Source: Octopus bimaculoides (lineage: Eukaryota). From it: 36,332 bases of DNA. Where the stretch lies: assembly GCF_001194135.2 (NCBI RefSeq), contig NC_068986.1, forward strand, positions 76,494,345-76,530,676, written 5' to 3'. The position numbers and the translations under genes are program-made. Within the stretch, counting starts at the first letter, position 1; every line of letters begins with the position of its first letter. The notes beneath the pieces are model-generated. The model searched no databases, was not told the DNA's origin, and was given only the letters and a program-made list of their open reading frames with translations. Shown piece by piece: positions 3,981 through 33,365 of the stretch.

Positions 3981-4900
3981 TAGTAGGCATCCGTCGGTCT
4001 CGAGAGAGCATGGATTTGCACCCGGAGAAATTGTGTCAGCTGCCGATGATGGTGCAGCATCAGCTGTGGCTATAGAGGCCCACATGGGAGTGGCAGTCAT
4101 GCATACGGCGACTGCATTTAAAAGAGCTCTCCACCGGGGGTACTGGTTTTTTCTTTCGTCGAGTGCGCTTTTCTTTTGTGGCAATTTCCTGTTTCTCCTC
4201 CTCTCGCTTTATCCCCTTTAGCAGTATTTGTCTCCAGCGTGGGCAATCATTTATGACCTCCTCCCATCTCAGGACGTCCAGACCTATTGACTTCACATGT
4301 CTATTGCAGACGGCCTTGAAACGAAGGTGAGGTCGTCCTCGTGCTCTTGTGCTGGAGGCCAATTCCCCATACAGGAGGTCTTTTGGGATCCTCCTATCCG
4401 GCATGTGATGTACATGACCGAGCCAGCGCAGACGGTGCTGCTAGAGCAGGGTGAATATATTGGGTGTCTTAGCGTGGCTGAGGACTTCGGTGTTGGTGAT
4501 GCGGTCGGTCCACTTGATATCCAAGATACGTTTCACCAGTACGTTGGTCTTCTTCAGAGTGATAGTCAGGCTGAATTCCTGACAGGTCTTTGAGAGTTTG
4601 TCTACAAGGTGTTGCAATTTGCTCCTCAGAGTGCACTATCAGTGCTGCGTCGTTCGCGAACAGCGTTTCTCTAATGAGTACCTGACGAACCCTGGATTTT
4701 GCTTTCAGTCTCGACAGACTAAACAGTTTACCGTTTTACCGTCTGATCTGGTGTGACGGTAGATACCATGATGTTCCAAATGCATGTTTCAACATGACTA
4801 CGAAGATGCCAAACAGTGTGGGGGCGAGCACACAGCCCTGCTTCACGCCGCTACATATGTTGAATGCCTCCGAAGAAGAGATATCAAATTGAACGATGCC
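3981..4900 (-). mobile_element. 5'-truncated, internally deleted RTE-clade LINE (BovB/RTE-1-like)
   Basis: SGVKQGCVLAPTLFGIF; GKLFSLSRLKAK..LFANDAAL (FADD decayed); KKTNVL fused to RILDIKW; RLRWLGHV..MPDRRIPKDLLYGEL..RGRP..RFK; C-terminal CHSHVGLYSH; RTE-type 3' tail cgagaccgacggatgcctacta. Confidence 0.92.
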
Positions 4901-6111: not shown

Positions 6112-6465
6112 CGCAGACACGGCCTTGCAGTTAAGAAACTCGCTTGGCAAACCACGTGGTTTCGGGTTCAGTCCCTATGGGCAGCACCTTGTGCAAGCGT
6201 CTTCTTCTACAATCCCGGGCCGAGCTATGCCTTGTGAGTGAATTTGATAGATAGAAACTGTGGAAGCCAATCTTATGTGTGTGTGTGTCCATTATTTGTC
6301 ACCACTTAACAAATGATAATGGTTTGGTTACATCCCCATAACATAACTTTGCGGTTCGGCAAAAGACAGCCATACAATAAGTATCACACTTAGAAAAATA
6401 AGTACTGGGGGTCGATTTGTTCGTTGCTGTCCAATGATTGAAACAAGTGAAAGAAAATAAAAGAA
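6112..6465 (+). mobile_element. SINE family B (tRNA head, CORE-like middle), diverged
   Basis: ggtttcgggttcagtcc head, caccttgtgcaagcgtcttct middle, gcggttcggcaaaag...ggggtcgatttg tail; homologous to 22697-23098. Confidence 0.75.
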
Positions 6466-7652
6466 ACAAGACACATATAGACGTATATATAGACACATGA
6501 TTTTTACTACTACGTTACCTTGCTTCGTTACTAGGTCTCGATCGTTCTGATCTTGGGCCATAAATCTGAGCGATCAACAGCAGTGACAATAAAGATAGTC
6601 ACAACTATATCAATAACCGACACAACAACAGGAAATTAAAAAACGAAGTCTACCAAATGGAATGTTGTCTTCCTCAGAGAGTTAACGTGCAGTTTTAGGT
6701 GTAATCTTTTTTTTATTTTTATATAAATCCTGCCAGAAGGAACTATACGAGGAAGTGTATGTAAACCTACTTACATAGGCATAATGATCGATTTAAAAAA
6801 GAATAAAATTAAGGCATTTCACCAGTACTCTTATGTTTTCTTTATGAAATTACGGAATATCACTTCAGCTCAATCTATTTTCATTTTTTAAAACTCTTAA
6901 ACCGCATATTAACTTCTAGAAGTCAAGTTACTATATGCTACAAGTTTAGAGATGTGAGAAACTGAGAACGATATATTTCTTTTGTTTGTTAAAAGTCAAA
7001 AATTAATTCTCTGTTTTTAACTGCCCCAAAATCTGTAAAATATCAATAAAATTAACTTCTGACGAAGCACCATATAAAAACATGCTTTCCCGTGAGGAAT
7101 ATCGGCGATTTGCTACACTCGGGTCAGCTCTTGTATCTTCATCGCTCTTAGAGTTGGTGTTGACGCCGTCGGTAGTGGTGGGTGCTGTTGATAAGTCGGC
7201 GTAACATGATACTTGATTTTGGGGGACCTGATGCAACCATGTTGAGTGAATGCTCATAGTTCACTCGTCATACTAATATAAATGTAATTTTAACAACAGT
7301 GAGAACAATGAGGAAACGACCCGAAATGCACTCAGTAAATCGAACATTTAGTAGATTAACGAAGCTTTCTGTTAAATGAATATATTTTTGCTATCATTAC
7401 TAGACCTCTTCTTTTCAATAAAATTCGTAGAGTGGCTGCTCAAGAATACAGATATATAAATCAACTGTGATGTAAAACCACACCAAACTTTCGTAGAATT
7501 TTCTAATTAAAACATAAAAATTACAAGGATAACATTGATTTCTACTGGGGGCACAAAGCAACACATTTTGGAGGTGGATGTAGTAAGATTATAATGTTTC
7601 CCTGTACACCACTGGTACTAATACTATCATACAGCTCAAATGAGGATGAAAG

Positions 7653-11765: not shown

Positions 11766-11813
11766 TGTATGTATGTATGTATGTATGTATGGTTATGGTT
11801 AAGNNNNNNNNNN

Positions 11814-12553: not shown

Positions 12554-12912
12554 GTTGTTGTTGTTGGCACTCCGTCGCTTACGACGTCGAGGGTTCCAGT
12601 TGATTCGATCAACGGAACAGCCTGCTCATGAAATTAACATGCAAGTGGTTGAGTACTCCACGGACACGTGTACCCTTAACGTAGTTCTCGGGGATATTCA
12701 GCGTGACACAGTGTGACAAGGCTGACCCTTTGAATTACAGGCACAACAGAAACAGGAAGTAAGAGTGAGAGAAAGTTGTGGTGAAAGAGTACAGCAGGGT
12801 TCGCCACAATCACCTGCCGGAGCCTCGTGGAGCTTTTAGGTGTTTTCGCTCAATAAACACTCACAACGCCTGGTCTGGGAATCGAAACCGCGATCCTAAC
12901 CATTGCGCCTCC
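12554..12912 (-). mobile_element. SINE family A, near full length, 14-bp TSD
   Basis: TSD acggttgacaattt at 12540-12553 and 12913-12926; (CAA)n tail; small deletion in the tRNA-like head. Confidence 0.92.
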
Positions 12913-13648: not shown

Positions 13649-13905
13649 ATGTATATATTTTTCTCACTTCTGTCTGTCTGTCTGTCTCTCTCTATATATA
13701 GTATAGATACATGGGTATTATTGATAGATAAAGCATCAACATCATTAACATCACTGTGGAAAACATGTTTAATCCACAATCTTGACTCTCTGTGGACAGA
13801 AAAAATAAGCTGTCAGTCTGACAAGATTTATTAAACCATCTTCAGAAATCGATTATCATATTTTCTGGCATGCAAATCGATTTTTTTTTTTTTTTTAGAC
13901 CAAAA

Positions 13906-14690
13906 TTAGCAGAGGTACCCAGCATTGCCTGGCATAACTCTCAATAGAGTAGTCATTCAAATGAACCAAAAGACTTCCGTCAAACATGACTGTAGAGGTA
14001 ACAATTTACATGTTTTGTCCCTAAAGAGGACCTTTGAACGTTCACTATGAAATATCTCTACTGCGGTGCTGATAGCAAAGATGAATCCGAGGGTAACAAT
14101 TTAATCTTGCTGGTCCTGAAGAGAGCCTTGGATCATTCTCTCTTAAAAGTCTCAGCAGCAGTGCTGCCAGCAAAGACAAATCCAGTGATAATTTATAGTT
14201 GGTGGTCCTGAAGAGAACCTTTTAATGTTCACTTTGAATTATCTCAGTGGCAGTGCTGCCAGCAAAGATGAATCCGATGGTAACAATTTAAACTTGGTGG
14301 CCCTGAAGAGGGCCTTGGATTGTTCACTCTTAAACTCGAGAGCTGCCAACATATAGTTGACCATGGGAGAAGCATGGTTCTTCTAAATTAAACCTTACAA
14401 CTGTCAGCACCTGACCCTGTGATTTGTTAATCGACATGGTGAAACTGAGCTGGAGAGGGAATTGCAGCCCTCTGAATGTGAAAGAAATGTCTTTACAGAA
14501 TGGAATGAGAGGTATTCTTGGTATGAAGACAGTATCCCACTTACCACATCCTGTAAATATTGTTGCCTCAATAACATGAGGCATCACCTTTTGGATGACC
14601 AGACTCGTTCCAAATTCCTGAGGAGCAATAAGTGTGGTGGCAATCCAGGAGGGTCTAAGGGAGTTAAGAAATTCTGTGGGGTAATTAACA
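13906..14690 (-). mobile_element. Helitron 3' fragment: PIF1-like helicase C-terminus, tandem repeats and 3' terminus
   Basis: 14690-14333 translates VNYPTEFLNSL...VIEATIFTG...VFIPRIPLIP...LQFPLQLSFTMSINKSQGQ...EPCFSHGQLYVGSSRV (helicase motifs V/VI). Terminus gccaggcaatgctgggtacctctgCTAA|t fits a CpG-decayed hairpin + CTRR end. Confidence 0.9.
13997..14330 (-). repeat. Four ~95-bp tandem repeats, each with a histone-type stem-loop
   Basis: Units start ~13997, 14092, 14185 and 14279; hairpins at 14017-32, 14112-27, 14204-19 and 14299-314. Confidence 0.85.
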
Positions 14691-15156
14691 ATCCACATAC
14701 AGTAAGTGTTAAAATTTACACCTGGGTTAAATTGTGCTTTCTTGGTTAGGAGCGTGAAAGGATGCCAAAGCTCAAGGAAAAAAAAAAAATTAACTCCCCA
14801 TTCCACACTTGATTGTGGTGAAATTACATGGAAACAACTGGGTGCAAAATTAAATTCAATCATCCTAAAATTAACTAAGCAAACCAAAGTTTAGTCAGGG
14901 AGATTTAAAAATTCGCTACTCCATTTGTAGGACTTGAGTAACTAATACGTCATCTTTCGTTTAAATTGACTGTTATTTCCAGAAGTTAAAATGCTTTGCT
15001 GTGACCATAATATGAACTTTAAAAGTGGTCCAAAGGGGCTCACTGCCCTTGCTAGGGGGTTCTCTTGCAGAATTCAAGTGATAAAGAATGTGTGGTACTT
15101 TATCTCATGGCAGGCAGTAACCATAATAAACTCCTGGGGTTCTGATGCTGTTTTAT

Positions 15157-15460
15157 TGTAAGCCTAGTACTTATTCTATCGGTCTGTTTTGCCGAACTGC
15201 TAAGTTACGGGGATGCAAACACACCAGCATCGGTTGTCAAGCGATGTTGGAGGAACAAACGCATACACACAAACATATACATGCGCATACATATATATAT
15301 ACGACAGGCTTCTTTCAGTTTCCATCTACCAAATCCACTCACAAGGCTTTGGTTGGCCCGAGGCTATAGTAGAAGACACTTACCCAAGGTGCCATGCAGT
15401 GGGACTGAACCCGGAACCATGTGGTTCGTAAGCAAGCTACTTACCACTTAGCCACTCCTG
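15157..15460 (-). mobile_element. SINE family B (tail truncated)
   Basis: Close match to 22697-23098. Confidence 0.9.
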
Positions 15461-17044: not shown

Positions 17045-17426
17045 GGAGGCGCAATGGCCCAGTGGTTAGGGTAGCAGACTCGCGGTCATAGGATCGCGGT
17101 TTAGATTCCCAGACCGGGCGTTATGAGTGTTTATTGTGCGAAAACACCTAAAGCTCCACGAGGCTCTGGCAGGGGATGGTGGCGAACTCTGCTGTACTCT
17201 TTCACCACAGCTTTCTCTCACTCTTTCTTCCTGTTTCTGTTGTGCCTGTAATTCAAAGGGTCAGCCTTGTCACACTATGTCACGCTGAATATCCCCGAGA
17301 ACTATGTTAAGGGTACATATGTCTGTGGAGTGCTCAGCCACTTGCACGTTAATTTCACAAGCAGGCTGTTCCGTTGATCGGATCAACTGGAACCCTCGAC
17401 ATCATAAGCGACGGAGTGCCAACAAC
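17045..17426 (+). mobile_element. SINE family A, full length, 14-bp TSD
   Basis: tRNA-like head with A box (tggcccagtgg) and B box (ggtttagattcc); ends gccaacaac; TSD atatgtactcctaa at 17031-17044 and 17427-17440. Confidence 0.93.
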
Positions 17427-17977
17427 ATATGTACTCCTAAATCTTTAGGAGAACTCTCTTCTATATTAGTATTATAATCTAGATTAATAATTCTAAATGT
17501 ATTAATTGAAATAAATGATACTATTCCTAGGAATCTTAATTAGTTTCTATTTTTATTTTGACCAATTCACTTTCAACCTCCCTTGGTTCTATGATACACG
17601 CTTTCTAATTTAAAGTGATCTAAATTAAAGCCTATCAGCAATATTTCGTGTTAATTTATATTTGGAGATGCAAATTAAGAGTAACAGTTGTTTTACTAAA
17701 TTCTTCATTATTTTGAAAATTGATTGAAACAAAGGTGGTATATTTTAGTAAGAATATGGTAACAAAAAAGTTAGATTTAGACCTGGAGGTAAATAACATC
17801 AAAAGATACCTTTACCACCGATGTATAAAAGTTAGTTGTTGAGAAATTTATAAAATTGACAAGGGCTTAAATGATAGCCTGAAAAATGACAGTGGTTCAA
17901 CCAAGAATCAGGGCAAACTGTTAGTGGTTTGCATTGGCAAAAATTAGGAGGGTTTGTACAAGAGTTTGGTTCATTAA

Positions 17978-18290: not shown

Positions 18291-18859
18291 NNNNNNNNNN
18301 NNNNNNNNNNNNNNNNNNNNNNNNNNNNNNNNNNNNNNNNNNNNNNNNNNNNNNNNNNNNNNNNNNNNNNNNNNNNNNNNNNNNNNNNNNNNNNNNNNNN
18401 NNNNNNNNNNNNNNNNNNNNNNNNNNNNNNNNNNNNNNNNNNNNNNNNNNNNNNNNNNNNNNNNNNNNNNNNNNNNNNNNNNNNNNNNNNNNNNNNNNNN
18501 NNNNNNNNNNNNNNNNNNNNNNNNNNNNNNNNNNNNNNNNNNNNNNNNNNNNNNNNNNNNNNNNNNNNNNNNNNNNNNNNNNNNNNNNNNNNNNNNNNNN
18601 NNNNNNNNNNNNNNNNNNNNNNNNNNNNNNNNNNNNNNNNNNNNNNNNNNNNNNNNNNNNNNNNNNNNNNNNNNNNNNNNNNNNNNNNNNNNNNNNNNNN
18701 NNNNNNNNNNNNNNNNNNNNNNNNNNNNNNNNNNNNNNNNNNNNNNNNNNNNNNNNNNNNNNNNNNNNNNNNNNNNNNNNNNNNNNNNNNNNNNNNNNNN
18801 NNNNNNNNNNNNNNNNNNNNNNNNNNNNNNNNNNNNNNNNNNNNNNNNNNNNNNNNNNN
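18291..18859. other. Assembly gap (others: 11804-11813, 20524-20583, 23942-24357, 26053-27013, 27871-27989)
   Basis: N runs, mostly next to SINEs or microsatellites. Confidence 0.99.
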
Positions 18860-19180
18860 CCCAGACCGGGCGTTGTGAGTGTTTATTGAGCGAAAACATC
18901 TAAAGCTCCACGAGGCTCCAGCAGGGGATGGTGGCGAACTCTGCTGTACTCTTTCACCACAACTTTCTCTCACTCTTACTTCCTGTTTCTGTTGTGCCTG
19001 TAATTCAAAGGGTCAGCCTTGTCCCACTGTGTCACGCTGAATCTCCCTGAGAACTACGTTAAGGGTACACGTGTCTGTGGAGTGCTCTGCCACTTGCACG
19101 TTAATTTCATGAGCAGGCTGTTCCGTCGATCGGATCAACTGGAACTCTCGACGTCGTAAGCGACGAAGTGCCAACAACAA
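18860..19180 (+). mobile_element. SINE family A (5' end in the N-gap)
   Basis: Near-identical to 17109-17426. Confidence 0.9.
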
Positions 19181-20185
19181 CATATCTAGAAATAAATATA
19201 AATTTTAATTTTAGTAACTTAATTTATTTTCAAAATTCATTAATGCATATGGACATTGTAGTTCATTAGAAGTATGGTGAGGAAAGAATTAATCATGTCA
19301 GTCAAAAAAAACAAAAAACTTATCATGTGATCTTGCTGTTGTCATGCCATCCTGGAATGGAAATTCTGTACTCATCTAAGATGGGTATTACTTGTAAAAC
19401 TGCTCTGTAAAAAGATATTGATTGTCACTTAACCACGTATCTGTGTGTTATATGTATATAATTTTTAATGTTTGCTATGCAACGGGGTATTATATACCTG
19501 TACATGAATCAATCTGATGGAGAGTGGGGTTTCTAAATAGTGCGACAGTTGTGTGTACTAGATCTCTGAAAAATCTTGTCTGACTCACTTCTTTCTAATG
19601 TAATAATAAAATAAATTTAGATATTGATAAAATCGTATTAGACAAGTTTAAGTACCAGCTGGTCATGGGTCAAACCTTGGTGGTTGTTGTTTCAATCCAA
19701 GTCTGTTAAGCAGTTTCATAATGAAACACATCACAACTATGACCATTACAGTTTTTTCTCAACTGTAGTTTTTGTAGGATTTACATTATCCATTGTGGCC
19801 TTTCTTCTTAACACTAGCTGTATGTAGATTTGAAGAGGATTTAGCTACTGTTTCTAGCAGTCCAAATGACCATGTAGAGGGTCCCTTGTTAGCTTATGAT
19901 CTCGTTTTTTTTCTTCTTTGCACCAGGTCAATACTGATCGAGTCGAACTATAATCAAAGGCATTCCAGTTGAGACCATCCTGTCTTTGTATAGCTAAGAC
20001 AACATTGGCCAGTGTGTCCTTCCTCTTTTTTGTTTTTTAAGATTTGAAGAAAAGTTGACTGCTATTTCTGGAAGGTTGAACAACCCTGTAGATACACCCT
20101 TGTCATTTTTTTGACTCCAGGAGATTTGTATTCTGTTGTTTTTGCAGTTGAATGTGTACACCTTGCTAATGTATACTCTTTACTC

Positions 20186-20523
20186 TACACTTTTACTTGT
20201 TTCACTCATTTGACTGTGGCCATGCTGGGGCACCGCCTTTAGTCTAGCAAATCGACCCCAGGACTTATTCTTTGTAAGCCTAGTACTTATTCTATCGGTC
20301 TCTTTTGCCGAACCGCTAAATTACGGGGACGTAGATACACCAGCATCGGTTGTCAAGCGATGTTGAGGGGACAAACACAGACACACAAACACACACATAT
20401 ATATATATACATATACAATGGGCTTCTTTCAGTTTCTATCTACCAAATCCACTCACAAGGCTTTGGTCGGCCCGAGGCTATAGTAGAAGACACTTGCCCA
20501 AGGTGCCACGCAGTGGGACTGAT
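20186..20523 (-). mobile_element. SINE family B, runs into an N-gap
   Basis: Close match to 22697-23098. Confidence 0.9.
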
Positions 20524-20637
20524 NNNNNNNNNNNNNNNNNNNNNNNNNNNNNNNNNNNNNNNNNNNNNNNNNNNNNNNNNNNNCAGAAAAAAAATCAATA
20601 CTCTTTGTGTAAAGTTTCTTGCAGTATTTGCTCTGCA

Positions 20638-22670: not shown

Positions 22671-22696
22671 CTATTTTTGAGGTAATACTCTTAACT

Positions 22697-23098
22697 CTCT
22701 TTACTCTTTCACTTGTTTCAGTCATTTGACTGCGGCCATGCTGGAGCACCGCCTTTAATCGAGCAAATCGACCCCAGGACTTATTCTTTGTAAGCCTAGT
22801 ACTTATTCTATCGGTCTCTTTTGCCGAACCGCTAAGTTATGGGGACGTAAACACACCGCCATCGGTTGTCAAGCGATGGGGGGGGGGGGCAAACACAGAC
22901 ACACAAACACACATACATATATATAAACATATATACGATGGGCTTCTTTCAGTTTCCGTCTACCAAATCCACTCACAAGGCTTTGGTCGGCCCGAGACTA
23001 TAGTAGAAGACACTTACCCAAGGTGCCACGCAGTGGGACTGAACCCGGAACCTTGTGGCTGGTTAGCAAGCTACTTACCACACAGCCACTCCTGCACC
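22697..23098 (-). mobile_element. SINE family B, full length
   Basis: Antisense tRNA-like head (gggactgaacccggaacc...ccacacagccactcctg), CORE-like cttacccaaggtgcc, CA/TA simple-repeat middle, tail tactctttcacttgtttcagtc. Confidence 0.92.
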
Positions 23099-23930: not shown

Positions 23931-24357
23931 TTTAAATGGGTNNNNNNNNNNNNNNNNNNNNNNNNNNNNNNNNNNNNNNNNNNNNNNNNNNNNNNNNNNN
24001 NNNNNNNNNNNNNNNNNNNNNNNNNNNNNNNNNNNNNNNNNNNNNNNNNNNNNNNNNNNNNNNNNNNNNNNNNNNNNNNNNNNNNNNNNNNNNNNNNNNN
24101 NNNNNNNNNNNNNNNNNNNNNNNNNNNNNNNNNNNNNNNNNNNNNNNNNNNNNNNNNNNNNNNNNNNNNNNNNNNNNNNNNNNNNNNNNNNNNNNNNNNN
24201 NNNNNNNNNNNNNNNNNNNNNNNNNNNNNNNNNNNNNNNNNNNNNNNNNNNNNNNNNNNNNNNNNNNNNNNNNNNNNNNNNNNNNNNNNNNNNNNNNNNN
24301 NNNNNNNNNNNNNNNNNNNNNNNNNNNNNNNNNNNNNNNNNNNNNNNNNNNNNNNNN

Positions 24358-24867: not shown

Positions 24868-25300
24868 GTTTAGGTGTGGTTGTGTGGTTAGGAAATTTAC
24901 TTCCCAACCACATGGTTCTGGGTTCAGTCCCACTGTGTGGTACCTTGAGTAAAATGTTTTCTACTCAAGCTCAGGGCTGACCAAAACCTTGTGAGTGGAT
25001 TTGGTAGATAGAAATTGAAAGAAGCCGGCGAGCTGACAGAAGCATTAGCACACCGGGCGAAATGCTTAGCGGTATTTCGTCTGCCGCTACATTCTGAGTT
25101 CAAATTCCGTCAAGGTCGACTTTGCCTTTCATCCTTTCAGGGTCGATAAATTAAGTACCAGTTACGCACTGGGGTCGATATGATCGACTTAATCCCTTTG
25201 TCTGTCCTTGTTTGTCCCTTAGCCCTTTGTGGGTAATAAAGAAATAAGAAACTGAAAGAAGCCTGCCATGTATATATGTATATATATTCTTTTACTTGTT
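24868..25300 (+). mobile_element. SINE B head interrupted by SINE C (25025-25246) with ~15-bp TSD
   Basis: agaaattgaaagaag (25010-25024) and agaaactgaaagaag (25247-25261) flank the family C copy. Confidence 0.85.
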
Positions 25301-27138
25301 TCAGTCATTTGACAGTGGCCATGCTGGAGCACCGTGTGTTCGTTACTGTCTCTTTGACTTGACATTGTGTGATAGTTGTAAACAAGTGTCACTGAATGCA
25401 AGTGGTGTCCTTCATTTTCAATATTCTGTGATATTTTGGTGAAGGGGAAATATCTTACTTGGAAACAAGTGAGAGTTGGTGACAGGAAGGGCATCTGACT
25501 GCAGAAAATCAGCCTCAGCAAAATTCTGTCCAACCCATGCAAGCTTAGAAAAGTGCACATTAAAAAACTATGATGATGATGATGATGTGGGTTTGTAAAT
25601 ATGCTTCAAGTGGTGTTGAGTGGAATAGAATTAATCTGACACCCAGTTTAACATAGACATTTGATCTTCAGATTTATCTTTAGTAGAGCTCATTCTCTTG
25701 ATCTTTGGCTGTATAGAATTAATCAGTTGCCTGATTTAACCCACTTAGCCCTTTGATGGTTTCAACAGAGTTCATTTTGACCTAATTTCTAGTCTGAAGC
25801 TAACAAGAACTTTCTCCCTTCTTCCCACCATTTGTGGAGATCCTATAAAGGGTCATGTGCTGGACCCTTCTCTGATAAAGCAATGAAAAAAAAAAATTAG
25901 ACTTTAGAAACCAGTATTTTTATTTTGCTATTTATTATACACACATACTCTTTTACTCTTTTACTTGTTTCAGTCATTTGACTGCGGCCATGCTGGAGCA
26001 CTGCCTTTAGTTGAGCAAATCGACCCTAGGACTTATTCTTTGGAAGCCTAGTNNNNNNNNNNNNNNNNNNNNNNNNNNNNNNNNNNNNNNNNNNNNNNNN
26101 NNNNNNNNNNNNNNNNNNNNNNNNNNNNNNNNNNNNNNNNNNNNNNNNNNNNNNNNNNNNNNNNNNNNNNNNNNNNNNNNNNNNNNNNNNNNNNNNNNNN
26201 NNNNNNNNNNNNNNNNNNNNNNNNNNNNNNNNNNNNNNNNNNNNNNNNNNNNNNNNNNNNNNNNNNNNNNNNNNNNNNNNNNNNNNNNNNNNNNNNNNNN
26301 NNNNNNNNNNNNNNNNNNNNNNNNNNNNNNNNNNNNNNNNNNNNNNNNNNNNNNNNNNNNNNNNNNNNNNNNNNNNNNNNNNNNNNNNNNNNNNNNNNNN
26401 NNNNNNNNNNNNNNNNNNNNNNNNNNNNNNNNNNNNNNNNNNNNNNNNNNNNNNNNNNNNNNNNNNNNNNNNNNNNNNNNNNNNNNNNNNNNNNNNNNNN
26501 NNNNNNNNNNNNNNNNNNNNNNNNNNNNNNNNNNNNNNNNNNNNNNNNNNNNNNNNNNNNNNNNNNNNNNNNNNNNNNNNNNNNNNNNNNNNNNNNNNNN
26601 NNNNNNNNNNNNNNNNNNNNNNNNNNNNNNNNNNNNNNNNNNNNNNNNNNNNNNNNNNNNNNNNNNNNNNNNNNNNNNNNNNNNNNNNNNNNNNNNNNNN
26701 NNNNNNNNNNNNNNNNNNNNNNNNNNNNNNNNNNNNNNNNNNNNNNNNNNNNNNNNNNNNNNNNNNNNNNNNNNNNNNNNNNNNNNNNNNNNNNNNNNNN
26801 NNNNNNNNNNNNNNNNNNNNNNNNNNNNNNNNNNNNNNNNNNNNNNNNNNNNNNNNNNNNNNNNNNNNNNNNNNNNNNNNNNNNNNNNNNNNNNNNNNNN
26901 NNNNNNNNNNNNNNNNNNNNNNNNNNNNNNNNNNNNNNNNNNNNNNNNNNNNNNNNNNNNNNNNNNNNNNNNNNNNNNNNNNNNNNNNNNNNNNNNNNNN
27001 NNNNNNNNNNNNNATATATATATTTAAGTGGCAATATACTACACTTTATCGTGCAGTTACTGTTAATACTTCATTTAGAGAATTAACATTGCTTGTTTTC
27101 ACCTTTTCGATATCAGTGAAGAATTTCACTTGAAAAGA

Positions 27139-27870: not shown

Positions 27871-27989
27871 NNNNNNNNNNNNNNNNNNNNNNNNNNNNNN
27901 NNNNNNNNNNNNNNNNNNNNNNNNNNNNNNNNNNNNNNNNNNNNNNNNNNNNNNNNNNNNNNNNNNNNNNNNNNNNNNNNNNNNNNNNN

Positions 27990-28856: not shown

Positions 28857-30133
28857 ATTTTGTTCTTTGAATTGACTACTGTAGAGTACTCATTACATAT
28901 CATTAGCAACAGTTGTCCTGAAATTCTCTAAGGTATCAAACATTCATCTCTGTTGGTGCAAACACACCTGTATGGTTAAGAATTTCACTTTGCAACTATG
29001 TAATTAATTTGAAGTTATTATCTCACTGCATAGTACCTTGGGCAAGTGTTTCCCCACTATAGTTTGGGATTGACGGAATTCTAGTCAGTGTAATTCAGTA
29101 GATGGAAACTGTAGAAACCTATCAGATGGATTGTTCTTGTTTTTGGATATCAGACCTATTCTAGTGCCCAGTTTAACGCCACCACCATACCATTAGATGC
29201 TTGTTCTAGGTTACTCTTTATTGCAAACATTCAAATATCATCTCTGGTCTGAAGAAAATTTTTTTCCTTTCCTTCCACCATTCCACCAGTCACATGGGCT
29301 CTGAAAGGATCTCATGGATGCTACCCTTCCACTCTAAAAAAGCTCATGTAAAAATTCAAAAAATCCAACTTCAATTATGGGGGAACAAGCATGCAACATT
29401 TAGTCTAACATCAGTAGAAAAGGCTCCCTGCATTTTTCCAGTCAATATGGAACTATTTGAGATATCTCAACCATCAATGTTATGAATGTTTTGTATGAAA
29501 GGCTACCAACATGATGGGTGAGTTCTGCTAAATGCTAAGGTACTGAAAGTGGAAAAAAGGAACAAGTAATGTTTCATTACTGATACAAACTTATATTTTT
29601 GCTATGTATGGAAGAAGCTGTCAATAATATGAAAGGGTTTGCCTCTTTATTAATTACTTCAGCGTTGATTAGCTTATATCTATATTATCTTTTATCTTTT
29701 ATTTGTTTCAGTCAATAGACTGTGGCCATGTTGGGGCACCACCTTGGAGAACTTTTTAGTTGCATGAATCAACACCAGTATTTATTTTTTTTTTAAGCTT
29801 GGTACTTATTCTGTTGGGTTGCTTTTGCTGAACTGCTAAGTCATGGGGATGTAAACACATCAGCACCAGTTGTCAAGTGTTGTTGGGAGACAAACACAGA
29901 TACAAAGACACACACTGCCATGAAGGTAGTATCTGATGATTGTGCTGGGACACTAGACATATTATCAAACAATGTTTGGCGTATTCACAGCACATGAAAC
30001 TAATAGTAGCACCTAAAAACATATATTTTGTCCACTAAATAATATTTATCTCTCACAAGAGGAAGTACTATTTTTTTGCTGATCTTACCATCATGGAAAC
30101 AGTGCATTACATATATATATATATATATATAAG

Positions 30134-30445
30134 CACCCACTACACTCTCGGAGTGGTTGGCGTTAGGAAGGGCATCCAGCTGTAGAAACTCTGCCAAATC
30201 AGATTGGAGCCTGGTGTAGCCATCTGGTTCACCAGTCCTCAGTCAAATCATCCAACCCATGCTAGCATGGAAAGCGGACGTTAAACGATGATGATGATGA
30301 TGATATATATGATGGGCTTCTTTCAATTACCATCTATCAAATTCACTCACAAGGCTTTGGTCAGCCCAAGGTGCTACATAGTGGGACTGAACCTGGAACT
30401 ATGTGGATGGGAAGCAAGCTTCTTACCACAGCCATGCCACGCCTA
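30134..30445. mobile_element. SINE family E (+, 30134-30302) abutting a SINE B head (-, 30305-30445)
   Basis: Family E copy ends in an (ATG)n tail; the following sequence matches the family B head. Confidence 0.85.
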
Positions 30446-32599: not shown

Positions 32600-33059
32600 T
32601 TATTAAGATTTAAACACTGCTTCATCATCTTCACCACTGCCACCACCACTACTAGAATATAGAAGGATGAAACTCAGCCATTTCTATCATTCTGCTGCTG
32701 CTACCACCACCACTGCTGAGGACTGCGCCAACTTCCAATGTCTGCTTTGTTTGTGCATTGTTTGTGCAGCTGGATGTCCTTAACACCATCCACTTTATAG
32801 AGTTAGCTCACTGACACTAGTGAGGTCACCAAATAATTTGAAAGACAAGACCTCCCAACTGAATTGGGATTGGGATGTCGCATTGATAGAGGTGGCTTTA
32901 TTTCAGGTTGAGGGGCTAGATATGATAGAGGGACAGGAATAGATATCTTGCTATAGAGGAGGTATATGGGTATCCCAACTGAAAAGAGATAATAGAGATG
33001 ATGATGATGATGTGTTGGGGTATATATAATGTGTGTGTATATGTATATATGTGGCCTGG

Positions 33060-33365
33060 TACTCTGTCGGTCATGAGTGTCCTAGTTGATCTGATTAAGG
33101 GAACAACCTATTCGTGAAATTAACGTGCAAGTGGCTGAGCACTCCACAGAAACATATACACTTAACATAGTTTCCTGGGAGATTCAGCATGACACAGAAT
33201 GTGACAAAGTTGGCCCTTTTGAATTACAGATGGAACTCATTTTTGCCAGTTGAGTGGATTGAAGTAACATGAAAAAAGTGTTTTGCTCAAGGACACAATG
33301 CACCACTGGGAATCGAACTTATGATCATGAGCTGAATACCATAACCATTAAGCCACATGCCTTCC
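33060..33365 (-). mobile_element. SINE family A'
   Basis: Family A body followed by the ..tgctcaaggacacaatgcaccactgggaatcgaac.. head, as at 2009-2262. Confidence 0.75.

What the first reader, a model, noticed from the sequence alone, without database searches (positions are those of the whole stretch)
14017..14314. Helitron 3' region carries four tandem histone-mRNA-like stem-loops directly after the helicase frame
Seen on the helicase sense strand: ccaa GGCCCU CUUC AGGGCC ACCA (14314-14299, ~15 nt after the stop), aaaa GGUUCU CUUC AGGACC ACCA, ccaa GGCUCU CUUC AGGACC AGCA, and caaa GGUCCU CUUU AGGGAC aaaa, spaced 95/92/95 nt. Known: replication-dependent histone mRNAs end in GGYYYU-4-nt loop-ARRRCC with an A-rich 5' flank and ACC(C)A 3' flank, bound by SLBP; a C at loop position 1 is the C. 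elegans variant, while most animals have U. The first two hairpins differ by stem substitutions that keep pairing. Inference: a rolling-circle transposon may have captured or mimicked the SLBP signal, which could tie its RNA to S phase or seed SLBP sites in host introns. I know of no description of this. Caveats: no purine-rich U7 HDE follows; the helicase frame stops at SRV, earlier than typical RepHel proteins; and they could just be duplicated Helitron terminator hairpins.
Basis: partly seen in the sequence, partly recalled or inferred. Interest (0 to 1): 0.75.

Follow-up and report, generated by a model that had tools for sequence, protein, structure and literature searches.

The report
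Histone-like hairpin repeats in dead Helitron
A decayed fragment of a rolling-circle transposon (Helitron) carries a short tandem repeat whose units contain a hairpin that looks very much like the 3' end signal of histone mRNAs, but nothing here shows that the signal is used, conserved or shared by related elements.

Summary
On the minus strand, a Pif1/Helitron helicase reading frame ends at ...LYVGSSRV*. Fifteen nucleotides later the first of four hairpins begins, spaced 95/92/95 nt. The hairpins belong to a 3.6-copy, ~95-bp tandem array (13995-14328).

The array lies inside a Helitron. The element's real 3' end is a different hairpin plus CTAA at 13906-13932, and it matches the termini of related Helitrons.

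Hairpins 1 and 2 are very good histone stem-loop look-alikes. They score 27.3 and 26.7 bits on Rfam Histone3, whose gathering threshold is 34. Hairpin 2 is 24/25 identical to stem-loops that follow real H2B and H3 genes, which themselves score only about 31 bits. Hairpins 3 and 4 have lost pairing and flanks.

The functional reading lacks support:
- Covariation among the four is no better than shuffles.
- No purine-rich downstream element follows.
- The helicase is a dead, truncated fragment.
- Ten related Helitron 3' regions have no such hairpin.
- No other copy of the unit could be found.

Best reading: an inert, satellite-like internal array that grew from one founding unit. That unit held either a captured piece of a histone 3' end or a chance look-alike. 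The host's own histone stem-loops and the genomic copies of this family could not be retrieved, and they remain the decisive missing data.

The parts
14333..14890 (-). Open frame holding the C-terminal fragment of a Pif1-like Helitron helicase. Clear homology runs 14333-14704, with weaker similarity up to about 14800. It ends at ...SINKSQGQVLTVVRFNLEEPCFSHGQLYVGSSRV and lacks the last ~25 residues that relatives have. It also lacks about 14 residues internally.
   Evidence: 370 homologues, best E 9e-35, Pfam PF21530 Pif1_2B on the hits; relatives continue GSxKNLYVYAPxGKTKNIVYxEVL after SRV; all tblastn alignments end at 14333; the fragment alone reaches no Pfam threshold.
14330..14332 (-). Stop codon TAA that closes the helicase frame. 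It lies in sequence that recurs in the repeat units (TTTAAGAG, as before SL3), so it is a by-product of the junction and not the native stop.
13995..14328 (-). Tandem array, unit ~95 bp, 3.6 copies, 72% matches. Units 1 and 3 are more alike (83.6% over 128 bp, offset 187 bp) than neighbouring units (73%), which indicates growth by duplication of a dimer.
14299..14314 (-). SL1: GGCCCU CUUC AGGGCC, flanks uccaa / accaa. Perfect 6-bp stem. Best histone stem-loop look-alike.
   Evidence: 27.3 bits, E 2.1e-5. (-11.4 kcal/mol, z -2.7). (27/28 identical to L003, 21/21 to L008).
14204..14219 (-). SL2: GGUUCU CUUC AGGACC, flanks uaaaa / accaa. One G-U pair.
   Evidence: 26.7 bits. (-6.4 kcal/mol). (24/25 identical to the stem-loops after H2B and H3 in L011).
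14112..14127 (-). SL3: GGCUCU CUUC AGGACC with a C-A mismatch at pair 3 and flank AGCA. Decayed.
   Evidence: canonical hairpin not the minimum-energy fold, z +0.8..
14017..14032 (-). SL4: GGUCCU CUUU AGGGAC with a G-A mismatch at pair 2 and no ACCA flank. Decayed. Last, partial unit of the array.
14249..14260 (-). Second small palindrome of the unit (GGCAG CA CUGCC in unit 1, GCAGC ACU GCUGC in unit 2). It is part of a second predicted hairpin in each unit.
13933..13994 (-). Non-repeated spacer between the array and the Helitron terminus.
13906..13932 (-). Genuine Helitron 3' terminus: hairpin CCAG-GCAATG-CTGG, then GTACCTCTG, then CTAA, followed by host T. It shows CpG decay relative to its relatives, and one stem pair changed on both sides (G-C to A-T).
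   Evidence: 86% over 29 nt to L001 7253-7281. (L001/L002: CCCGGGCAACGCCGGGTACCTCTGCTAG). (L013: CCCGGCAACGACGGGTATTTCTGCTAG).

Best explanation
This is a short, satellite-like tandem array sitting inside the 3' part of an old, dead Helitron remnant.

Proposed history:
1. A deletion or replacement event cut the helicase gene right after codons ...SRV. It removed the last ~25 codons and the native 3' untranslated region. (Shown by comparison with relatives.)
2. A foreign segment of about 95 bp was left between the truncated gene and the element's real 3' terminus. (Inferred.)
3. That segment contained one 26-nt stretch that is either a captured piece of a histone-gene 3' end, stem-loop without the downstream element, or a chance look-alike. 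I put capture at about 45% and chance at about 40%. (Inferred.)
4. The segment was then duplicated in tandem, first to a dimer and then the dimer again, by replication slippage or unequal exchange. (Pattern shown, mechanism inferred.)
5. Since then the units have drifted neutrally. Units 1 and 2 still look like SLBP sites, and units 3 and 4 no longer do. (Shown.)

The four stem-loops are therefore one ancestral event copied four times. They are not a conserved module of the transposon, and no function is required to explain them. If the region is transcribed in the helicase sense, SL1 and SL2 would be plausible SLBP ligands. Without a downstream element, U7-type cleavage is unlikely. (Inferred.)
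For: - Array structure and dimer pattern.
- Helicase homology stops exactly at 14333, while the aligned relatives continue about 25 residues.
- The stop codon lies in repeat-unit sequence.
- A true Helitron terminus lies downstream of the array and is conserved in L001, L002 and L013.
- Pairing decays in SL3 and SL4 and there is no covariation (438 of 500 shuffles as good).
- The hairpin core is only slightly better kept than the rest of the unit (85% against 75% for units 1-3, not significant).
- No histone-like hairpin occurs in ten related Helitron 3' regions.
- Relatives carry ordinary A/T-rich 3' regions with an AATAAA.
- Sequence identity of SL1 and SL2 to bona fide histone stem-loops.
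- Helitron-superfamily elements that carry internal tandem repeats are well documented in molluscs: PMC7492417.
Against: - Only this one copy could be examined. Conservation across copies is therefore untested, not disproved.
- The hairpins are on the sense strand of the helicase, and the first lies 15 nt after a stop codon. That mimics histone mRNA layout and would suit a functional 3' end.
- The match is too good to dismiss lightly. The Infernal E-value, or the 38-bit exact pattern, scaled to a genome of roughly 2.7 Gb gives about 0.02 expected chance hits. That genome size is my assumption.
- Lack of a purine-rich downstream element is weak evidence. C. elegans, the organism known to use C-type loops (PMC1924863), is thought to process histone mRNA without a recognisable U7 snRNA (the U7 point is from general knowledge, not from the cited paper).
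Confidence: 0.6

Rival explanations
1. Functional module. A Helitron lineage uses histone-type stem-loops as its 3' end or stability signal, or spreads SLBP-binding sites. This would couple its RNA to S phase.
For: The hairpins are in sense orientation. SL1 lies 15 nt after a stop codon. SL1 and SL2 score within about 4 bits of real C-loop histone stem-loops and SL2 is 24/25 identical to them. The hairpin core is slightly better conserved than the rest of the unit.
Against: The upstream reading frame is a degenerate helicase fragment of about 125 codons, with no Rep domain in the window. The stop codon comes from the repeat itself. Two of four hairpins are broken, one at the critical second pair. 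There is no covariation and no purine-rich downstream element. Ten related Helitron 3' regions lack it and use ordinary 3' regions. No literature precedent was found.
Confidence: 0.08
2. Pure chance look-alike. The founding unit happened to contain a GC-rich 6-bp hairpin with A-rich and ACCA flanks, and tandem duplication then made it look like a designed set of four.
For: All four derive from one unit, so there is only one independent event. The stem-only pattern is not enriched in the window. Exact 21-nt matches also occur in plainly unrelated contexts: bacterial-looking coding DNA in L009 and L010, an AT-rich contig L004, and a non-histone eukaryotic locus L005/L007. Both scores are below Rfam's gathering threshold. 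A reader scanning many windows for many motifs will meet such hits.
Against: For this one motif the expected number of chance hits in a genome of a few Gb is about 0.02. This comes from scaling and from the information content of the pattern used. Identity to real histone stem-loops extends into both flanks.
Confidence: 0.35
3. Insertion of an unrelated mobile element or satellite, carrying the 95-bp repeats, into a Helitron copy. On this reading the array has nothing to do with the Helitron.
For: Helicase homology is lost abruptly at 14333. The array has no detectable similarity to the 3' regions of related Helitrons or to the helicase tail.
Against: No terminal repeats, target-site duplication or poly(A) bound the array. 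No other copy occurs in the 36-kb, repeat-rich window. The end of the helicase frame (TGTTGGCAGCTCT...TTTAAGAG) aligns with the 3' part of the unit (TGCTGGCAGCACT...TTTTAAGAG). This suggests the duplicated segment spanned the junction, but the support is marginal (p about 0.05).
Confidence: 0.12
4. The hairpins are duplicated Helitron terminator hairpins.
For: Helitron 3' ends carry a hairpin shortly before CTRR. Tandem copies of Helitron 3' parts exist in relatives (L013, 1288-bp period).
Against: The true terminator is present once, at 13906-13932. Its sequence is different (CCAGGCAATGCTGG + GTACCTCTGCTAA) and is shared with relatives. The repeat units have no CTRR at the proper distance and no similarity to it.
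Confidence: 0.02

Closest known systems
Replication-dependent histone mRNA 3' stem-loop (Rfam RF00032, the SLBP binding site)
   Same: SL1 and SL2 have a 6-bp stem GGYYYU/ARRRCC, a 4-nt loop with U at position 3, an A-rich 5' flank and an ACCA 3' flank. The C at loop position 1 is the type known from C. elegans (CTTT/CTTA loops, PMC1924863). It is also found here behind real H2A, H2B and H3 genes in environmental metazoan contigs L006, L011 and L012.
   Different: It does not follow a histone gene. No purine-rich downstream element follows. It is repeated four times at about 95-nt spacing. The score is below the family's gathering threshold. Two of four copies are broken. No evidence of processing or binding exists.
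Helitron-superfamily elements with internal satellite-like tandem repeats (Cg_HINE of the Pacific oyster, PMC7492417; DINE-1/HINE-type elements)
   Same: A short array of roughly 100-bp repeats lies between the flanking modules of a rolling-circle transposon, just upstream of the 3' palindrome, probably in a mollusc. Such arrays are variable and decaying.
   Different: Those are non-autonomous Helentrons with subterminal inverted repeats and a microsatellite. Here the element has a canonical Helitron end (hairpin + CTAA) and keeps a helicase fragment. Copy number and dispersal of the array are unknown.
Helitron gene-fragment capture (established knowledge from maize, bats and others)
   Same: A foreign segment lies between the transposase gene remnant and the 3' terminus. 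A small host-derived non-coding piece would fit this.
   Different: No donor gene was identified. The piece would be only about 26 nt of recognisable host sequence, without histone coding sequence.
HERV1/LTR12 elements with U7-complementary, HDE-like motifs (PMC11417402)
   Same: A transposable element carries a sequence element of the histone 3'-end machinery.
   Different: That is the other half of the signal: the U7-binding motif, not the SLBP hairpin. It occurs in a retroviral LTR, acts on transcription, and is supported experimentally.

Membership tests
Histone 3' UTR stem-loop (RF00032) | 6-bp stem GGYYYU / ARRRCC closed by a 4-nt loop | tested here: inconclusive
   Met by SL1 (perfect) and SL2 (one G-U). 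Not met by SL3 (C-A at pair 3) or SL4 (G-A at pair 2)..
Histone 3' UTR stem-loop (RF00032) | U at loop positions 1 and 3 | tested here: inconclusive
   U at position 3 is present in all four. Position 1 is C in all four. C is the C. elegans type (PMC1924863). It also occurs behind real H2A, H2B and H3 genes in L006, L011 and L012. L006 has both a CUUC and a UUUU loop.
Histone 3' UTR stem-loop (RF00032) | A-rich 5' flank and ACC(C)A 3' flank | tested here: met
   SL1 has ccaa/ACCA and SL2 aaaa/ACCA. SL3 has AGCA and SL4 AAAA, both decayed..
Histone 3' UTR stem-loop (RF00032) | Score at or above Rfam's gathering threshold (34 bits) | tested here: not met
   27.3 and 26.7 bits. For scale, real C-loop histone stem-loops score 30.8-34.2 bits.
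Histone 3' UTR stem-loop (RF00032) | Lies shortly after the stop codon of a replication-dependent histone gene | tested here: not met
   It follows a truncated helicase frame. No histone coding sequence occurs in the window.
Histone 3' UTR stem-loop (RF00032) | Purine-rich downstream element (U7 site) about 10-20 nt after the hairpin | tested here: not met
   After ACCA comes AGUUUAAAUUGUUACC, which is not purine-rich. The host U7 sequence is unknown.
Histone 3' UTR stem-loop (RF00032) | Binds SLBP and directs cleavage after ACCA | not testable with these tools
   Needs EMSA or CLIP and 3'-end sequencing.
Helitron (canonical, Helitron1 type) | Rep/helicase protein with a Pif1-like helicase | tested here: inconclusive
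   Only the C-terminal ~125 codons of the helicase are present, and they are degenerate. No Rep domain was found upstream.
Helitron (canonical, Helitron1 type) | 3' end with a short hairpin about 8-12 nt before terminal CTRR, followed by host T | tested here: met
   13906-13932: CCAGGCAATGCTGG GTACCTCTG CTAA | T. It is homologous to the termini of L001, L002 and L013.
Helitron (canonical, Helitron1 type) | 5' end starting TC after host A | not tested
   The 5' boundary lies somewhere between about 14890 and 15150, where a SINE-like repeat starts. No other copies were available to define it.
Helitron/Helentron-borne satellite-like arrays (HINE type) | Internal tandem array between conserved left and right flanks, just upstream of the 3' palindrome | tested here: met
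   The array at 13995-14328 lies between the helicase remnant and the 3' hairpin.
Helitron/Helentron-borne satellite-like arrays (HINE type) | Many dispersed copies with the same flanks and array; Helentron substructures (subterminal inverted repeats, microsatellite) | not testable with these tools
   The host genome was not searchable. No second copy was found in the window or in the collections.

The most novel reading that the evidence does not exclude
A Helitron subfamily in a (probable) cephalopod captured a genuine histone mRNA 3' stem-loop and amplified it. The captured stem-loop may be of the C-loop type that its present host does not use, which would point to capture in another animal before horizontal transfer. 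On this reading, sense transcripts of its copies, including those in host introns, carry working SLBP sites that affect RNA stability or 3' end choice in S phase.
Probability: 0.06. Interest if true: 0.75.

Novelty: new member of a known kind. Interest (0 to 1): 0.3.

Why it matters
If the hairpins really descend from a histone 3' end and occur in many copies, this would be the first transposon found to spread SLBP-binding sites. I found no report of a histone stem-loop in any transposable element. It would offer a natural experiment on what a stem-loop does without its U7 partner element.

As it stands, the locus mainly illustrates two ordinary processes. One is replacement of the 3' part of a Helitron by foreign DNA. 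The other is local tandem amplification of about 100-bp units near a Helitron 3' end, as known from mollusc Helitron-superfamily elements. It also cautions that four tandem look-alikes count as one event.

A practical by-product concerns Rfam's Histone3 threshold of 34 bits. It misses bona fide C-loop histone stem-loops, which score about 31 bits behind H2B and H3 genes.

Tried and rejected
1. Finding other copies of the 95-bp unit.
- A six-frame translation of the array, searched against 5.8 billion predicted proteins, gave nothing.
- An exact 19-mer of the unit in prokaryote genome contigs gave 5 bacterial matches, the number expected by chance.
- The hairpin pattern gave no match in viral contigs.
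- Self-comparison of the window found no other copy.
- An exact look-up of the window's helicase ORF found no record, so the host assembly could not be reached.

2. Obtaining the host's own histone stem-loop.
- A search with the H2B protein of L011 returned no cephalopod or mollusc entry.
- No histone gene occurs in any fetched Helitron locus.
- A literature search for the literal hairpin sequences found nothing.

3. The idea that the array derives from the missing helicase tail. The frame reading SKALFRATKFK vaguely recalls PKNLFIFAPGGKTK. A profile of 96 helicase tails finds no match in any frame of the array, so this is rejected.

4. The idea that the unit extends into the helicase codons VGSS. 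The 11/13 match is collinear, but p is about 0.05. I kept it only as a hint.

5. Duplicated terminator hairpins: rejected (see rivals).

6. Similarity between the array and the 3' regions of relatives L001 and L002: none apart from the last 29 nt, the terminus.

7. Other Rfam hits in the region (mir-310-like on both strands, snoRNAs) have E of 0.05 to 9 and are taken as chance.

Full report
WHAT IS IN THE SEQUENCE

Read on the minus strand, an open frame at 14890-14333 ends ...SINKSQGQVLTVVRFNLEEPCFSHGQLYVGSSRV, followed by TAA at 14332-14330. Fifteen nucleotides later the first of four hairpins starts:
- SL1, 14314-14299: GGCCCU CUUC AGGGCC.
- SL2, 14219-14204: GGUUCU CUUC AGGACC.
- SL3, 14127-14112: GGCUCU CUUC AGGACC.
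- SL4, 14032-14017: GGUCCU CUUU AGGGAC.

The spacing is 95, 92 and 95 nt. Tandem Repeats Finder reports a single array at 13995-14328, with period 95, 3.6 copies and 72% matches. The four hairpins are therefore the same position in four copies of one unit (alignment). Units 1 and 3 are more alike (83.6% over 128 bp at an offset of 187 bp) than neighbours (73%), so the array grew by duplication of a dimer.

THE CONTEXT IS A REAL BUT DEAD HELITRON, AND THE ARRAY LIES INSIDE IT

The frame is the C-terminus of a Pif1-like Helitron helicase. It has 370 homologues, with a best E-value of 9e-35, and the hits carry the Pif1_2B domain and include Octopus bimaculoides proteins. On its own the fragment reaches no Pfam threshold.

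The 96 relatives with a normal-length tail that were aligned all continue about 25 residues after SRV (GSxKNLYVYAPxGKTKNIVYxEVL). Every tblastn alignment of relatives to the window stops exactly at 14333 and starts near 14700. The window therefore holds only about 125 degenerate codons of the helicase, with an internal loss of about 14 residues and no Rep domain upstream.

The stop codon lies in sequence that recurs in the repeat units: TTTAAGAG, as before SL3. The stop 15 nt before the hairpin is thus a by-product of the junction and not a designed short 3' UTR.

Downstream of the array, at 13932-13906, the sequence CCAGGCAATGCTGG-GTACCTCTG-CTAA followed by T is the Helitron 3' terminus. It matches the ends of related elements:
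- CCCGGGCAACGCCGGGTACCTCTGCTAG in L001 and L002.
- CCCGGCAACGACGGGTATTTCTGCTAG in L013.

The differences from these relatives are typical CpG decay. The histone-like hairpins are not duplicated terminator hairpins, because the terminator is present once and has a different sequence.

HOW HISTONE-LIKE ARE THE HAIRPINS?

At Rfam's gathering score nothing in the window matches. In a permissive scan of 901 nt, SL1 scores 27.3 bits and SL2 26.7 bits on Histone3, against a gathering score of 34, with E about 2e-5. SL3 and SL4 are not reported.

To calibrate, I scanned metagenome contigs for the exact pattern AAGGYYCTCTTCAGRRCCACC. Of ten loci, three carry it directly behind real histone genes: H2A in L006, H2B and H3 in L011, and H3 in L012. 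These bona fide C-loop stem-loops score 30.8-34.2 bits, so Rfam's threshold is itself too strict for this loop type.

SL2 is 24/25 identical, flanks included, to the L011 stem-loops. SL1 is 27/28 identical to an orphan stem-loop in L003 that is followed by a purine-rich stretch.

A C at loop position 1 is the C. elegans type (loops CTTT/CTTA; PMC1924863). L006 shows a CUUC loop (H2A) and a UUUU loop (H2B) on the same contig.

The stem-only pattern is not enriched in the window (4 found, 2.3 expected). With loop and flanks included, the expectation for one such hit in a genome of about 2.7 Gb is roughly 0.02. This comes from my scaling of the E-value and from the 38 bits of the exact pattern, and the genome size is an assumption. 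The same exact pattern also turns up in clearly unrelated places: bacterial-looking coding DNA in L009 and L010, AT-rich L004, and a non-histone eukaryotic locus L005/L007. A chance origin is therefore not excluded, especially for a reader scanning many windows for many motifs.

IS THERE ANY SIGN OF SELECTION OR FUNCTION?

No.
- SL1 folds well (-11.4 kcal/mol, z -2.7) and SL2 moderately. SL3 and SL4 do not adopt the canonical hairpin.
- At stem pair 3 the four units show C-G, U-A, U-G and C-A. That is all four combinations of two independent transitions.
- SL4 has lost the second G-C pair, which is the key SLBP contact according to established structural work. This point rests on my own knowledge.
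- Pair counts are no better than shuffled controls, with 438 of 500 shuffles as good.
- The 26-nt core is only slightly better conserved than the rest of the unit (85% against 75% for units 1-3, not significant).
- After ACCA comes AGUUUAAAUUGUUACC, which is not a purine-rich element.
- Ten 3' regions of related Helitrons from other assemblies (L001, L002, L013-L020) contain no histone-like hairpin. They have no equivalent array between gene and terminus, and L001 has an ordinary A/T-rich 3' region with AATAAA.

ORIGIN

Helicase homology ends abruptly. A profile of 96 helicase tails finds nothing in any frame of the array, so the array is foreign to the gene.

The last helicase codons (TGTTGGCAGCTCT...TTTAAGAG) align collinearly with the 3' part of the unit (TGCTGGCAGCACT...TTTTAAGAG). 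This hints that the duplicated segment spanned the junction, meaning the array arose in place after the truncation. Support for this is marginal (p about 0.05).

The most economical history has four steps:
1. A deletion or replacement put a roughly 95-bp foreign piece between ...SRV and the 3' end.
2. That piece contained either a fragment of a histone 3' flank or a look-alike.
3. It was amplified in tandem.
4. The units then decayed neutrally.

Short arrays of roughly 100-bp repeats just upstream of the 3' palindrome are a known property of Helitron-superfamily elements in molluscs (Cg_HINE, PMC7492417).

WHAT COULD NOT BE DONE

I could not reach the host genome. The window's ORF is not on record. 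A six-frame search with the array found nothing. DNA scans of the available collections found only chance matches. A search meant to recover cephalopod histone genes returned none. Conservation across family copies and identity to the host's own stem-loops, which are the two decisive tests, therefore remain open.

I found no paper describing a histone stem-loop in a transposable element. The nearest case is LTR12 elements carrying U7-complementary motifs (PMC11417402).

VERDICT

- The functional part is unsupported.
- Best explanation, at confidence 0.6: an inert internal tandem array in a dead Helitron remnant.
- Origin of the hairpin: capture about 45%, chance about 40%.
- A functional SLBP module: below 10%.
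- Interest: 0.3.

Noticed in passing
L013 1178-3770 (ENA ERZ22157276 ctg13315l; the same place is seen in L014): Two head-to-tail copies (1288-bp period, 99.5% identical) of a Helitron 3' portion. Each holds the helicase C-terminal ORF and the terminus CCCGGCAACGACGGGTATTTCTGCTAG. This is a tandem duplication of a Helitron 3' end.
   Followed up: partly
L002 7524-7752: A 45/90-bp tandem array (5 copies, about 78% matches) starts immediately after the Helitron 3' CTAG at 7523. The same element also has a roughly 840-bp insertion, with inverted ends GGGGTGATCTCC...GGAGATCACCCC, relative to L001.
   Followed up: no
L006 413-458, 1578-1622, 2841-3004, 5645-6226: One 6.2-kb environmental contig links H2B and H2A genes, a U1 snRNA gene and the start of an 18S rRNA gene. 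The H2A stem-loop has a CUUC loop, and the H2B one has a UUUU loop and an A-U first pair. Both loop types therefore occur in one organism.
   Followed up: partly
L008 128-190 (minus strand): Two histone-like hairpins 39 nt apart (GGCCCUUUUCAGGGCC, then GGCCCUCUUCAGGGCC ACC) lie downstream of a RING-finger-like ORF, not a histone gene.
   Followed up: no
L003 1534-1579: An orphan histone-type stem-loop (31.5 bits) is followed by a purine-rich CCAGAAAGAAA, with no histone ORF within 420 nt upstream. It is 27/28 identical to SL1 of the window, including 5 nt of the upstream flank.
   Followed up: partly
L011, L012 (and in general): Bona fide stem-loops behind H2B and H3 genes with a CUUC loop score only 30.8-31.1 bits. 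That is below Rfam Histone3's gathering score of 34, so default Rfam annotation misses them.
   Followed up: yes
window 13881-13896: A run of 16 A (minus strand) lies 10 nt beyond the Helitron 3' end, after TTTTGGTCT. Its origin is unclear. It could be the tail of a neighbouring retroposon or part of the target site.
   Followed up: no
window 15156-15460, 20173-20522, 22685-23094, and weaker copies at 6130-6423, 24872-25026, 29688-29915, 30303-30444: A SINE-like dispersed repeat (about 300-360 bp, 87-90% identity between the best copies), with an ACACA-rich microsatellite, occurs many times in the window. One copy bounds the Helitron remnant on its 5' side.
   Followed up: partly
window 12556-12898, 17089-17427, 18860-19182 (also 513-665, 33043-33229): Another dispersed repeat of about 340 bp is present in three copies at 93-94% identity, plus shorter fragments.
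   Followed up: no
window 4060-4404 (minus strand): An ORF (MPDRRIPKDLLYGELASSTRARGRPHLRFKAVC...) looks like the C-terminal end of a non-LTR retrotransposon ORF2. This is from general knowledge and was not searched.
   Followed up: no
window 11804-11813, 18291-18859, 20524-20583, 23942-24357, 26053-27013, 27871-27989: Six runs of N (assembly gaps) show that the window comes from a scaffolded draft assembly.
   Followed up: no
window 13918-13932: The Helitron terminal hairpin differs from its relatives by CpG-type transitions. One stem pair changed on both sides (G-C to A-T), so the hairpin still forms.
   Followed up: partly
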